From Selaginella moellendorffii (lineage: Eukaryota > Plantae > Lycopodiophyta): 64,000 nucleotides of DNA. The stretch covers positions 618,586 to 682,585 of the forward strand of contig NW_003314320.1 of the NCBI RefSeq assembly GCF_000143415.4. Direction: 5' to 3'. Both the position numbers and the translations under genes were made by a program. The notes below the pieces were generated by a model. It had not been told where the DNA came from, did not search any database, and worked only from the letters and a program-made list of their open reading frames with translations. The first letter of the stretch is position 1. Each line of letters starts with the position of its first letter. Positions 7,815-12,086 of the stretch are shown here, one piece after another.

Positions 7815-10800
7815 ATGTGGTCCGATGGATCCGCCCGAGCTGCCAGGCGCTTTTCCTACCTGTTGCTGCAAGACGGTGAGCACTACATCCAGGACTGGAT
7901 CGCGACGTGCAAGCCGCCCAGCGCGCCCCGGTTGCGGCTGCACTCGTCGTCCTGGCAGCAGAATTGGATCAAGGGCCGCCTCCGCCTCTGCTCTAAATCG
8001 ATCTTCTTTGAGCCAGATGCCGCCTCCATCCCGATTTTGATGCTTCCACTCAACAAGGTGAGTAGGATCGAGCAATTGGCGGATAGGCCGGAGCTGGAAA
8101 TGAAAGGTAACAGGGGATTTATGGTGGAAGTTTCACTGCTCGTGACGATGAAGAAGAATGGGGTCGATGCTGCTTATGAGTTTGACAAGTCGGAAGGGAC
8201 ATGGTGGTTTATCCTGGATTTTGCTCCAGTCCAGCAGGTATAATTCATGGTTTTTTTCTGCGGCTTACAAGAATTTTATTGCGCTCACAGTTTCTTCACC
8301 AAGCGCAATCGCTCTTGTCTGTGAATTCACTTCCACCTCCTGAAAGAGATATGATTTTGCGCAACACTGCTGCTCAGAAGGAAGCGCAAGCTCATTTTGA
8401 TATCAGTCGCTTGGAGGATTATAGCGAGGAGATTCTTTTCAACTTTCCCGCAGCACAGGCAAGCTTACAATTCCCAACGTCTCAACAAAAATCTGGAATT
8501 TTGGCTACAGGTAACTCCTTTAGTGAGAGAGCCAGGTCGTCTGGTGTTTACACCAAACCGGTTATACTTTCAGGTTTGTTTTTCTTCTTATTTATTTGTC
8601 TCGCTCATAGGGGTCTTGTTTACACCAGCCTTTACACAACTTAAACAACGATACACCAGTACGCTCTCAGAAGTTGAGCTTTATAATTGCAGTTGCAAAA
8701 CGGCGTCATTCTTTGCAACACATTGGACTGGAAATATTTTTCAAGGATGTGAACATGTTTACAAGACAAACATCAGTAGGAGGATTTGTCGACGGTGGCA
8801 CAGCTTTTTTCACGTTTCTAAGTGTTCAAGATCGAGATGATGCAAGAGACCTGCTTGTTGACAAGCTAAAGGTAATTTTTTAAACTGTTCTCCCTCCCTC
8901 ACAGTGATGTTCGGCATCTAGTTCCATCTCCACGTCCCATGTTCTCATTTGCCATTCTGACCAGGCTCACCATCGACCAGGGCCAAACATCCAGCATCGG
9001 TTCACTTTTGGATAAAGGCAGTTCATGGCTTGATCGCGTCACAGCAGCATGGCAGGTAAGCTAGATTTCTGTAAGGGTGTTTTCAGTTAACAGATTTTGT
9101 AGGCAGGACATATCTCTAATTACGACTACTTGATGTACCTCAACTTGTTTGCGGGAAGGACGCGTTGTGATCTAGCACAATGGCCAGTAATGCCCTGGGT
9201 GTTAAAAGATTACGAAAGCACCACCTTAAACCTCAAAGATCCCGCGTCCTTTCGTGATCTCAGCAAGGTAATGGTGCTTTCATTTTAAATTTTAAATTTT
9301 CTGTTGGAACTATGTTTTCATGGTTTTTCTTGCAGCCTATTGGAGCTTTAAATCCTTCAAGGTTGGCTATTTTTCATGAGCGATTCCAACAGGTAGGGAA
9401 GTTTGTGTTTGAATTGCGCCTCAGTTTTATTGTTTAGATGCCATGTAAGGATGGCTCACATCCACCGTTCCTCTATGGAACACACTACTCTGCACCTGGG
9501 TAAGCTGTCAGTTGTTACTTGTGCTTGTCTCACCTTTACGTCTTGTGTCAGCTATGTTCTATATTGGCTGGTCCGTGTGGCCCCGGCTCATATGCTACGT
9601 CTCCAAGTAGCCAAGCATTTCTGAATTCTACAGGTCTTAACTCCTTTTTCCTTGCAGAATGGACGCTTTGATACACCAGATAGACTTTTCTTTAGCATTG
9701 CAGAGTCATGGCAGAGCGTATTGACAAATCACGCCGATGTGAAGGAACTAATTCCAGAGTTTTACGGGCTACCGTCCGGCTTTCTGGTTACAAGGTAATC
9801 TCGTTATAGCCTCACTTGTAAATCTTCTGTAGTTCGTATGAACAGGAATGACGTAAACCTCGGTGTTCGTCAAAATGGTGTACCTGTTGGGGACGTCACA
9901 TTGCCTCCATGGTAATTACAAGACTTGTGATTTGAGATTGTTTTATTCTTTGTGCGTTGTAGGGCAAAAGATCCTGATGACTTCCTAATTAAAAACCGAA
10001 GAGCATTGGAATGCAAGCACGTCTCGATGAACATTCAAGAATGGATTGACTTGATTTTTGGATATAAACAACGAGGCGAGGTAAGAACTAAGTGGTTCTT
10101 CTAGTGGTAAGCTTCATGTTTGCAGGCAGCACTTGCAGCAGATAATGTGTTCCATTATCTTACTTATGAGGGGGCTGTGGATCTGGATAAAATAGAAGAT
10201 CCTTTTGAACGCATGAGCTTTGAAGCCCAGGTACTTCATATAGTTGTGAACGTGGATAACAGTGATTTGACCAGATAAATGAATTCGGTCAAGCACCACA
10301 GCAACTCTTCACCGGTCCTCATCCATCTCGATCTGCAGTAGAAACCTCCGCGGACTTTGAGGAGCACAGGCAAGCTATGGTCGAGAGTGGCACGGGTAGC
10401 CTGTGTGCTGCGATATTGTCTCGAATTATGTCCAAGACGGCAGCTTTCGAGGCTGGTACTACGGAAGAAATGCGAGTAGATGAAGCGGCATTGTCGCACA
10501 CAATTTCTGTTGGCATCCCAGAGTCAGTGAAGCAAGACTCGGGCTCAGACACAGAAGAAGATGACATTCTATCGGCAAAAATCGAGTTTAAACGAGAGGC
10601 GGAGGCAAGCACTTTCCATCAGTCGGCATGGTCTAGCACACCAAGGACGCCTGCATGGTTGCCAACGCCACACACACCTCAGCTAGACGCAAACCTGTTT
10701 CGACGGAGTAAAAGTCCAAACTTTATGCTGTCTCCACGGATGGAGTGTCGTGAGCAACCTTGGACGCTTAAAAAACTAACCGACTCACAACAGCCATGGA

Positions 10801-12086
10801 AGGTTCATCGCGAGCCTATCAATGCCGTCCTCGTTTCCGATGACAACGCCTCGGAGTCTAGCACTCTTTATTCGGCTTCAAAAGATGGACTGATCAAGGT
10901 ACTTGAGTGTTGTCAAGATGACCGTTTGTACTGTTGAAAGAACCTTTCTACAGGTGTATTCCCTCTCTGAAGGCTTTCAAGTTCGTGCCACAAAGCTTGG
11001 AAATCTACCGATTTCTTCTCTTGCTTTAGCTACAAGCAACGATGCTTATCCTGTAAGTGTGCAAGTTTCTCTTTGTCTCAAATTCATCTCGCTCCTGCAG
11101 ACTGTACTTGCTGGCTCTTATGACAATTGTGTCTATGCTTATTCTGTAGACTATGGGAGGTCTTTAGGCAAGGTAAGCGAGCCGTGAATGTTTTCTGGTT
11201 TTAGCTGTAAAACCGGTATAGGTCCGCGTCCACGATGATTCCGTGTCTTGCCTTCGGGTGAGTAACTCGAAAATGGTCACGGGCTCGTGGGATGCAACAG
11301 TGAAAGTATGGACGCTGGATGAAGGGAGAGGTGGATGGGTACATAATTCCGGAGCATCCAACACACGTAAGTAATTTGCTAGTAAGCTCCAAGCAAGCGT
11401 TCGATTTTCTAACTATTGTTGTAGCGGAGATTGAACTAACCGAACACGAAGCTGGCATTTGGAGCTTGGATGTGGATTCCACAGGAGTTGTTGTAGCGTC
11501 CGGTGCTGAGGATGGTATGTTTCTTTACGTTCTTGGCAGTTTGTAGAACTTGGTATCCATCAGGGACTGTGATTCTTTGGGACATAAGAAGCAACGGCAT
11601 TCCGATATGGACATCAAACGACTTAGCTGGCTCTGCGTCTTCGATGCGTATGTCTGGTGACGGCCACAAGTTAATTGTTGTCTCAACATCTGGTTTTATC
11701 TACGCAATGGAGGTAAGCGGCTGGGTGGGCCATCTAAGAACTTATCCGTTCGAATTTTCAGCTGAGGCGGGGAGGCTCCATACTATCCCAGAAGAACTGC
11801 GAGACTCCTTTAAGATCGTGTGAAGTTATAGGAGACGTGGCTCTTGCTGGAAGGTGAGAAGTTGTCATTCAATATCTGTCTGATTTGTCGTGGTTGGTGT
11901 AGCTTCAGCGGTGAGCTGCTTTTCTGGTCCTGGGACAATGACGCTGCCACTTTTCAAAATCTACGCAATCATTCGGAGGCAGTCACCAGCATTGGTGTTG
12001 GAAGAAGGCACGGCATGGCTGCTAGCGTTGCGACAGCGTCTGAAGACTGTACGATACAGGTGTACAGCATCGATCGAAGTATGTAA
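7815..12086 (+). CDS. NSMAF: FAN/NSMAF-like protein: N-terminal GRAM/PH-like domains, BEACH domain, WD40 repeats
   Basis: N-term [14 protein letters not shown]...[17 protein letters not shown]; BEACH motifs [70 protein letters not shown]; WD repeats ([39 protein letters not shown]). Confidence 0.85.

What the first reader, a model, noticed from the sequence alone, without database searches (positions are those of the whole stretch)
7815..12086. FAN/NSMAF-type BEACH protein in a vascular plant
The N-terminus ([13 protein letters not shown]...[17 protein letters not shown]...PIL.LPL) matches the signature I recall for animal FAN (RFSLLLL...IRGSLKICSKSVIFEPD). The compact GRAM/PH-BEACH-WD40 layout is also FAN-like, unlike the giant BEACH proteins known from Arabidopsis. 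In animals FAN links TNF-R1 to neutral sphingomyelinase and actin; plants lack TNF-R. Inference: an ancestral eukaryotic module retained in seed-free plants, possibly tracking flagellated sperm or sphingolipid signalling.
Basis: partly seen in the sequence, partly recalled or inferred. Interest (0 to 1): 0.7.

Follow-up and report, generated by a model that had tools for sequence, protein, structure and literature searches.

The report
Spikemoss copy of FAN/NSMAF gene
This is a real, expressed spikemoss (Selaginella) gene for the small membrane-traffic protein FAN/NSMAF; public databases already name it so, it occurs in nearly all green plants and algae except flowering plants, and it does not follow the presence of swimming sperm.

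Summary
Window 7815-12086 (+) holds a 21-exon gene for a 1063-aa protein with the full FAN/NSMAF layout. That layout is an N-terminal PH_FAN domain (Pfam E=1e-39 on exon 1 alone), PH-BEACH, BEACH, a variable linker and a WD40 propeller.

- **Identity:** the product is 98.5% identical to RefSeq "protein FAN isoform X1 [Selaginella moellendorffii]", so the gene is already annotated.
- **Expression:** RNA-derived contigs from four studies lack the introns at the predicted junctions. Allelic variants give pN/pS of about 0.19.
- **Similarity to animal FAN:** the protein is collinear with amphioxus FAN (45% identity over the first 600 residues).
- **Descent:** a 55-protein FAN tree follows the species tree, which indicates vertical inheritance.

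- It is not limited to seed-free plants. Conifers (Cryptomeria, Taxus) have it.
- It does not track flagella. Conifers, Zygnematophyceae, Coccomyxa and dictyostelids all keep it.
- No angiosperm FAN turned up in three searches of 5.8 billion proteins, so a loss in flowering plants is likely but not proven.

The most likely function is an endosomal membrane adaptor, as reported for human NSMAF. This is inferred, not shown.

The joined spliced model was never sent to a search tool.

The parts
7815..12086 (+). Whole coding span of the FAN/NSMAF ortholog: 21 exons, 3192 nt of coding sequence, 1063 aa plus stop
   Evidence: tblastn of RefSeq P0213 onto the window; splice model; intron-less contigs
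7815..8237 (+). Exon 1, aa 1-141: start codon and most of the PH_FAN domain
   Evidence: Pfam PF25400 E=1.4e-39; junction 8237|8291 in 4 runs
8291..8458 (+). Exon 2, aa 142-197: end of PH_FAN and start of the GRAM/PH-BEACH module; followed by the only GC-AG intron
   Evidence: contig record lengths fit (table 8)
8511..8573 (+). Exon 3, aa 198-218: [21 protein letters not shown], the core strand of the PH-BEACH module
8629..8871 (+). Exon 4, aa 219-299: remainder of the PH-BEACH module
   Evidence: PH_BEACH match E=3.8e-5 on the ORF piece; neurobeachin PH-BEACH structure aligns to aa 192-598 of P0213 at E=7e-96
8981..9055 (+). Exon 5, aa 300-324. One contig (run X3) implies an alternative out-of-frame acceptor at 8965
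   Evidence: table 8 (X5 record has the productive length, X3 record is 16 nt longer)
9103..10230 (+). Exons 6-13 (9103-9267, 9336-9392, 9438-9499, 9552-9606, 9658-9794, 9846-9911, 9963-10080, 10126-10230), aa 325-579: BEACH domain
   Evidence: Pfam Beach pieces E=5e-18 to 8e-6; Beach E=6e-110 on P0213 aa 322-598; junctions 9055|9103, 9267|9336, 9499|9552, 9606|9658, 9794|9846 and 9911|9963 listed for 4 runs (table 5); 9392|9438 and 10080|10126 fit the contig record lengths only (table 8)
10275..10898 (+). Exon 14, aa 580-787: end of BEACH (to aa 598), the poorly conserved acidic and Ser/Pro-rich linker (aa 599-741, window 10332-10760), and the first WD40 blade
   Evidence: linker 15-26% identity among land plants; 157-232 aa in land plants against 58-62 aa in animals
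10954..12086 (+). Exons 15-21 (10954-11052, 11101-11172, 11222-11366, 11425-11514, 11564-11712, 11762-11853, 11903-12086), aa 788-1063 plus stop: WD40 beta-propeller
   Evidence: WD40 and beta-propeller Pfam matches on P0213 aa 742-1063; 30% identity to the amphioxus FAN propeller; all junctions seen in 4 runs

Best explanation
The locus is the Selaginella moellendorffii ortholog of FAN/NSMAF, the 'small' BEACH-domain protein (LvsF class). It is an expressed, spliced gene under purifying selection, and it was inherited vertically from the common ancestor of green plants and probably of eukaryotes. Shown: domain layout, orthology-grade similarity, transcription, splicing, constraint and phyletic spread. 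Inferred: it works as a membrane-associated adaptor of the endosomal system. [quoted passage not shown] The coupling to TNF receptor 1 would be a later animal addition. Flowering plants appear to have lost the gene; conifers have not.
For: - **Layout:** PH_FAN E=1.4e-39 on exon 1. On the 98.5%-identical RefSeq protein P0213: PH_FAN 7.5e-45, Beach 6e-110, WD40 propeller.
- **Existing names:** RefSeq calls it 'protein FAN isoform X1 [Selaginella moellendorffii]'. [quoted passage not shown]
- **Collinearity:** the alignment with amphioxus FAN gives 45% identity over 600 aa and 30% over the propeller.
- **Closest relatives:** the 120 best of 3641 BEACH-domain hits to conifer FAN include named animal, amoebozoan, heterolobosean and stramenopile 'FAN' proteins. 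Most carry PH_FAN, the exceptions being mainly short or partial models. One listed protein (P0231) is a neurobeachin-type, non-FAN protein with two BEACH copies.
- **Descent:** the FAN tree of 55 proteins recovers Viridiplantae (100), Chlorophyta (100), embryophytes (100), euphyllophytes (99), ferns (100) and gymnosperms (100).
- **Expression:** intron-less contigs in 4 runs from 4 studies; 15 of the 20 predicted junctions are listed and the other 5 fit the record lengths.
- **Constraint:** 24 synonymous against 15 non-synonymous variants, pN/pS 0.19.
- **Mechanism:** human NSMAF co-localises with RAB5A and RAB14 on early/sorting endosomes, and BEACH proteins bind cytosolic tails of membrane proteins (PMC11554844).
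- **Weak extra hint:** FAN-type BEACH proteins are fused to the VPS11 solenoid in unknown algae.
Against: - No functional data exist for any plant FAN. The endosomal role is carried over from one human cell study.
- The PH_BEACH Pfam score in Selaginella is below the gathering cut-off (23.5 against 27.5 bits), although the solved neurobeachin PH-BEACH aligns well.
- I could not fetch non-FAN BEACH proteins as outgroups, so orthology rests on the diagnostic domain, collinearity and hit ranking, not on a rooted multi-class tree.
- Angiosperm absence rests on annotated proteins of 619-1970 aa found by a word-index search, not on genome-level tblastn.
- The tissue of the RNA runs is unknown.
Confidence: 0.9

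Rival explanations
1. One reading: plant FAN is tied to cilia or flagellated sperm and is kept only where motile sperm exist.
For: It is absent from the angiosperm hits. It is present in bryophytes, lycophytes and ferns, which have swimming sperm.
Against: Full-length FAN occurs in Cryptomeria and Taxus and in the Zygnematophyceae Spirogloea, Mesotaenium and Closterium. These lineages lost flagella independently (bioRxiv 10.1101/2021.07.25.453666). It also occurs in Coccomyxa, Nannochloris and the dictyostelids Acytostelium and Heterostelium. Only one of the three flagella losses in streptophytes coincides with loss of FAN.
Confidence: 0.03
2. Plant FAN keeps the animal signalling role: it activates a neutral sphingomyelinase-like enzyme and so feeds ceramide or sphingolipid signalling, with a receptor other than TNF-R1.
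For: The name-giving activity of animal FAN (Adam-Klages 1996, as cited). All domains are conserved.
Against: Nothing in the sequence addresses it. From established knowledge, plants lack TNF-R1 and sphingomyelin. The family is present in many protists without TNF signalling, so the ancestral role must be more general. Pankiv et al. did not see human NSMAF at the plasma membrane.
Confidence: 0.1
3. Plant FAN acts mainly with P-bodies and mRNA decay, like Arabidopsis SPIRRIG, through DCP1 binding by the PH-BEACH module.
For: The human FAN PH-BEACH fragment binds human DCP1a and DCP1b and Arabidopsis DCP1 in yeast two-hybrid and co-precipitation assays (PMC4489804). The PH-BEACH and BEACH parts are the best conserved parts of the plant protein.
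Against: The evidence is interaction assays with fragments only, with no data on a plant FAN. This role is compatible with, rather than exclusive of, an endosomal role.
Confidence: 0.15
4. The gene is a contaminant, a horizontal transfer or a decaying pseudogene rather than a working plant gene.
For: None beyond its 'animal-sounding' name.
Against: It has 20 short introns of the local type. It is 98.5% identical to the RefSeq Selaginella protein. Spliced transcripts occur in several studies of the same organism. pN/pS is 0.19. The gene tree matches the plant species tree.
Confidence: 0.01

Closest known systems
[quoted passage not shown]
   Same: Same domain order (PH_FAN, PH-BEACH, BEACH, WD40). 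No ConA-like or alpha-solenoid part. Collinear over the full length with amphioxus FAN: 45% identity in the first 600 aa, about 60% in the BEACH domain, 30% in the propeller.
   Different: The linker between BEACH and WD40 is 157 aa here (up to 232 aa in other land plants) against about 60 aa in animals, and it is poorly conserved. Total length is 1063 aa against about 910-940 aa. Plants have no TNF-R1 partner. Function is untested.
Dictyostelium LvsF class and protist FAN proteins (Naegleria, Pelomyxa, Thecamonas 'FAN Factor', oomycetes)
   Same: Same family and architecture, with 57-61% BEACH-domain identity to plant FAN. They sit in one tree with the plant proteins.
   Different: They fall on the other side of the best-supported split of the tree, Viridiplantae against the rest (support 100).
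FAN orthologs of other green plants (Marchantia, Physcomitrium x2, Diphasiastrum, Ceratopteris, Pteridium, Adiantum, Cryptomeria, Taxus, Spirogloea, many chlorophytes)
   Same: Direct orthologs with 50-61% identity in the N-terminal 330 aa and the same layout.
   Different: Selaginella has the shortest linker and the longest terminal branch among land plants in the tree (0.55).
Arabidopsis BEACH proteins (SPIRRIG, BCHA1/2, BCHB/GFS12, BCHC1/2)
   Same: They share the PH-BEACH-WD40 module. SPIRRIG is called a 'homolog' of FAN in PMC4489804.
   Different: They are giant proteins with ARM or ConA-like, kinase-like or FYVE additions (PMC9537460). They do not appear among the PH_FAN-bearing hits or the 120 closest BEACH domains. 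They are paralogous classes, not orthologs.

Membership tests
FAN/NSMAF (small BEACH protein, LvsF class) | N-terminal FAN-specific PH/GRAM-like domain (Pfam PF25400 PH_FAN) at the very start of the protein | tested here: met
   E=1.4e-39 on window exon 1; E=7.5e-45 at aa 6-163 of P0213
FAN/NSMAF (small BEACH protein, LvsF class) | PH-BEACH module directly followed by a BEACH domain | tested here: met
   Beach E=6e-110 at aa 322-598. PH_BEACH scores 23.5 bits, just under the 27.5 cut-off, but solved neurobeachin PH-BEACH (1MI1) aligns to aa 192-598 at E=7e-96.
FAN/NSMAF (small BEACH protein, LvsF class) | C-terminal WD40 propeller | tested here: met
   WD40 and several beta-propeller profiles at aa 742-1063; aligns to the amphioxus FAN propeller
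FAN/NSMAF (small BEACH protein, LvsF class) | Compact size, without the alpha-solenoid and ConA-like region of typical BEACH proteins | tested here: met
   1063 aa with PH_FAN starting at residue 6. The layout is as described for human NSMAF in PMC11554844.
FAN/NSMAF (small BEACH protein, LvsF class) | Closer to animal and protist FAN than to other BEACH classes | tested here: inconclusive
   The ranking supports it: the best 120 of 3641 BEACH hits are almost all FAN-type and include named animal FAN; one listed protein (P0231) is neurobeachin-type. Collinearity also supports it.
FAN/NSMAF (small BEACH protein, LvsF class) | Binds the TNF-R1 neutral-sphingomyelinase activation domain and activates nSMase | not testable with these tools
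   Biochemical property of the animal protein. From established knowledge, plants have no TNF-R1.
FAN/NSMAF (small BEACH protein, LvsF class) | Early/sorting endosome localisation (RAB5A, RAB14) | not testable with these tools
   Reported for human NSMAF (PMC11554844). No plant data exist.
Cilium or flagellum-linked gene set (by phyletic pattern) | Present only in lineages that build cilia and lost with each loss of cilia | tested here: not met
   Present in cupressophyte conifers, Zygnematophyceae, Coccomyxa and dictyostelids. Flagella losses are as listed in bioRxiv 10.1101/2021.07.25.453666.
Large plant BEACH proteins (SPIRRIG, BCHA, BCHB, BCHC groups) | Long N-terminal ARM or ConA-like, kinase-like or DUF regions before PH-BEACH-WD40 | tested here: not met
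   No such region is present; the protein begins with PH_FAN.

The most novel reading that the evidence does not exclude
FAN, a BEACH protein dating back to the last eukaryotic common ancestor, was kept through the whole green lineage, including conifers that have no flagella, and was lost once on the stem of flowering plants. In non-flowering plants it would be an unstudied early-endosome cargo-sorting adaptor. Its loss would mark a change of endosomal sorting specific to angiosperms. The FAN-VPS11 fusion proteins seen in unknown algae would point to a working link with the CORVET/HOPS tethering machinery.
Probability: 0.3. Interest if true: 0.4.

Novelty: already known. Interest (0 to 1): 0.22.

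Why it matters
As a discovery it adds little, because RefSeq already calls this gene 'protein FAN' and the Marchantia homolog carries the FAN name.

Three useful points come out of the check.

- The attractive link to swimming sperm is wrong.
- The gene is shared by algae, bryophytes, lycophytes, ferns and conifers, and seems to be missing only from flowering plants. That explains why Arabidopsis-centred work on BEACH proteins never met it.
- No plant FAN has been studied. Marchantia has one copy and would be a clean system to ask what the ancestral, TNF-independent job of FAN is.

Tried and rejected
- **Protein Atlas feature search with exon 1** gave only generic GRAM, GLUE and BBS5-type PH look-alikes. 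With the conifer N-terminus it found large PH_FAN clusters for chordates and rotifers only. This is weak, but consistent with no angiosperm FAN.
- **PDB sequence search with exon 1** found nothing significant, so no solved relative of the PH_FAN domain was found by sequence.
- **Paper searches** for NSMAF with cilia or phylogenetic profiling, LvsF with FAN and BEACH, and NSMAF with plant names found no paper on plant FAN. The Marchantia SPIRRIG paper counts five BEACH proteins but never mentions FAN in its text, and its tree is held only as an image.
- **Organism of the gymnosperm-like transcript cluster P0214.** I tried the sample accession and cluster names without success. It sits as sister to Cryptomeria plus Taxus and is most simply another gymnosperm, but this is not shown.
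- **RefSeq locus for a DNA comparison.** P0213 is not on record by exact look-up.
- **A plant-specific conserved insert in the linker** was considered and rejected. The linker is the least conserved part (15-26% identity) and varies in length everywhere.
- **The 50%-identity representative search** cannot speak to angiosperms. Gymnosperm, fern and lycophyte proteins appear to share one cluster, so I rest the absence claim on the 90%-cluster searches.
- **Earlier notes of this scan** had no entry for BEACH or FAN.
- **Rfam** found only the tRNA.

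Full report
**What is there**

The + strand between 7815 and 12086 carries a string of short ORF pieces in changing frames. This is the look of a eukaryotic gene with many short introns.

Exon by exon, the pieces match Pfam as follows:
- Exon 1 (7815-8237) matches PF25400 'FAN protein N-terminal PH domain' at E=1.4e-39.
- One later piece matches PH_BEACH.
- Four pieces match successive parts of the BEACH profile.

An exhaustive HMMER search of 1.84 billion representatives with exon 1 gave 230 hits. The best was a 1137-aa protein of the lycophyte Diphasiastrum complanatum.

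A word-index search with the N-terminal 330 aa of that protein returned 29 proteins, all carrying PF25400. Among them was RefSeq 'protein FAN isoform X1 [Selaginella moellendorffii]' (P0213, 1067 aa).

**Gene model**

P0213 maps onto the window from 7815 to 12083. Fitting splice sites to it gives 21 exons and 20 introns of 44-109 nt. Nineteen introns are GT-AG and one is GC-AG. The product is 1063 aa, of which 1047 residues are identical to P0213.

The differences from P0213 are 16 substitutions and a 4-residue stretch (IVVA) at the start of exon 18. That stretch needs an acceptor 12 nt upstream, which reads AA, not AG, in this window. The window is therefore S. moellendorffii or a very close relative, probably another haplotype or accession. 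Earlier notes of this scan had also called the genome Selaginella.

The exons were joined only inside local scripts, to fit the model and to classify variants. The joined model was not sent to any search tool. Searches used exon references or database proteins.

**Expression and constraint**

Twenty public runs from ten studies hold part of the stretch. Contigs from four runs of four studies were laid on 7500-12500.
- They lack the introns at 15 of the 20 predicted junctions that were listed, including 11366|11425 (table 5).
- The record lengths fit the remaining junctions, including the GC-AG intron (table 8).
- Contigs without introns can only come from spliced RNA, so the gene is transcribed.
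- One contig (run X3) is 16 nt longer between exons 4 and 6. This fits an out-of-frame acceptor at 8965. The contig from run X5 has the productive length.

Of 39 coding variants between the contigs and the window, 24 are synonymous and 15 are not, giving pN/pS of 0.19. This indicates purifying selection.

**Is it FAN?**

On P0213, Pfam finds the following:

| Region | Residues | Result |
|---|---|---|
| PH_FAN | 6-163 | E=7.5e-45 |
| GRAM/PH_BEACH signal | 173-280 | weak |
| Beach | 322-598 | E=6e-110 |
| WD40 propeller | 742-1063 | several profiles match |

Other lines of evidence:
- The solved neurobeachin PH-BEACH structure aligns to aa 192-598 at E=7e-96.
- The protein is collinear with amphioxus 'protein FAN-like', at 45% identity over residues 4-598 and 30% over the propeller.
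- The only large difference is the linker between BEACH and WD40. It is 157 aa here, 187-232 aa in other land plants and about 60 aa in animals. It is the least conserved part of the protein.
- The BEACH domain of the Cryptomeria homolog had 3641 significant hits among proteins of comparable length. The best 120 are almost all FAN-type, from land plants, green algae, Naegleria, Amoebozoa, oomycetes, brown algae, Thecamonas and animals. Most carry PF25400. One listed protein (P0231) is neurobeachin-type with two BEACH copies.

I could not obtain a set of non-FAN BEACH proteins as outgroups. A rooted multi-class tree is therefore still missing.

**Phyletic spread**

Named FAN-type proteins were found in these groups:
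- Liverworts: Marchantia polymorpha and M. paleacea, Riccia (two species), Calypogeia.
- Moss: Physcomitrium, two paralogs.
- Lycophytes: Selaginella, Diphasiastrum.
- Ferns: Ceratopteris, Pteridium, Adiantum.
- Conifers: Cryptomeria japonica (full length) and Taxus chinensis (partial).
- Zygnematophyceae: Spirogloea, Mesotaenium, Closterium.
- Mesostigma, and many chlorophytes.

A tree of 55 FAN proteins recovers Viridiplantae, Chlorophyta, embryophytes, euphyllophytes, ferns and gymnosperms with SH-aLRT support of 99-100. It recovers bryophytes and tracheophytes at 85-94. This pattern is vertical descent, not transfer.

No angiosperm protein appeared in the N-terminal searches with the lycophyte query or the conifer query. 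None appeared among the closest BEACH domains. Angiosperm proteomes dominate the named plant entries of such collections.

This makes loss in flowering plants likely. It rests on annotated proteins of 0.55-1.75 times the query length and on a word index, so I give it about 0.75.

**The cilia idea**

Flagella were lost independently in three streptophyte lineages, according to bioRxiv 10.1101/2021.07.25.453666:
- angiosperms;
- the conifer and gnetophyte line (cupressophytes, gnetophytes, Pinaceae);
- Zygnematophyceae.

FAN is kept in two of these three. It is also kept in Coccomyxa, Nannochloris and the dictyostelids. The proposed link to flagellated sperm is therefore contradicted, and 'retained in seed-free plants' is too narrow.

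**How it probably works**

No plant FAN has been studied.
- In human cells NSMAF was not seen at the plasma membrane. It co-localised with RAB5A and RAB14 on early/sorting endosomes. BEACH proteins were shown to bind cytosolic tails of membrane proteins as sorting adaptors (PMC11554844).
- The human FAN PH-BEACH fragment also binds DCP1, including Arabidopsis DCP1 (PMC4489804).

Every folded domain is conserved from plants to animals, and the family exists in many organisms without TNF signalling. The most economical reading is therefore an ancestral endosomal membrane adaptor, with TNF-R1 coupling added in animals. This step is inference.

**Known or new**

The gene is already annotated as FAN in RefSeq, and its Marchantia homolog carries the FAN name. 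I found no paper that discusses plant FAN. The finding is correct but ordinary. The remaining point of mild interest is the apparent loss of an ancient, unstudied trafficking protein in flowering plants alone.

Noticed in passing
window 7622-7695 (+): A tRNA-Thr (anticodon AGT) gene lies only about 120 nt upstream of the FAN start codon, on the same strand (ARAGORN; Rfam tRNA 67.9 bits). The FAN promoter and 5' UTR must fit in, or overlap, this short gap. One run (X1) has a high-depth contig over 7500-7666.
   Followed up: partly
window 8872-8980 (intron 4): Record lengths table 8 imply two acceptors 16 nt apart. The productive one, 8980|8981, is in the run X5 contig. An upstream one, 8964|8965, is in the run X3 contig; it shifts the frame and runs into a stop inside exon 5. 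This may be an unproductive splice form.
   Followed up: partly
window 11411-11425 (end of intron 17): RefSeq isoform X1 has four more residues (IVVA). These need an acceptor 12 nt upstream of the one used in all four RNA runs. In this window that upstream site reads AA instead of AG, so the difference may be a haplotype-specific splice-site polymorphism.
   Followed up: partly
proteins P0260 and P0266 (hits; organism unknown, ENA and Logan): A FAN-type N-terminus, PH-BEACH and BEACH (47% identical to Selaginella FAN over 590 aa) is fused to the VPS11 clathrin-repeat solenoid and VPS11 C-terminus in place of the WD40 propeller. The clusters have 9 and 29 member sequences, some on short Logan contigs of transcript size. 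This is a possible Rosetta-stone link between FAN and the CORVET/HOPS endosomal tethers, or a gene-model artefact.
   Followed up: partly
protein P0231 (hit; UniParc, organism unknown): A 1235-aa entry with two PH_BEACH plus BEACH copies in tandem and a neurobeachin-type propeller. It is probably a mis-assembled or duplicated fragment of a large BEACH protein, not FAN.
   Followed up: partly
window 30000-36000: An AT-rich stretch (GC 26-35% against about 47% elsewhere) with no long ORFs. It contains an assembly gap of N flanked by a 37-nt G run near 33236-33340.
   Followed up: partly
window 36325-36876 (-): An ORF whose translation looks like pentatricopeptide-repeat sequence (…MNSLLGFYRRCGCMAEARKVF…). 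It may be a PPR gene next to the AT-rich stretch.
   Followed up: no
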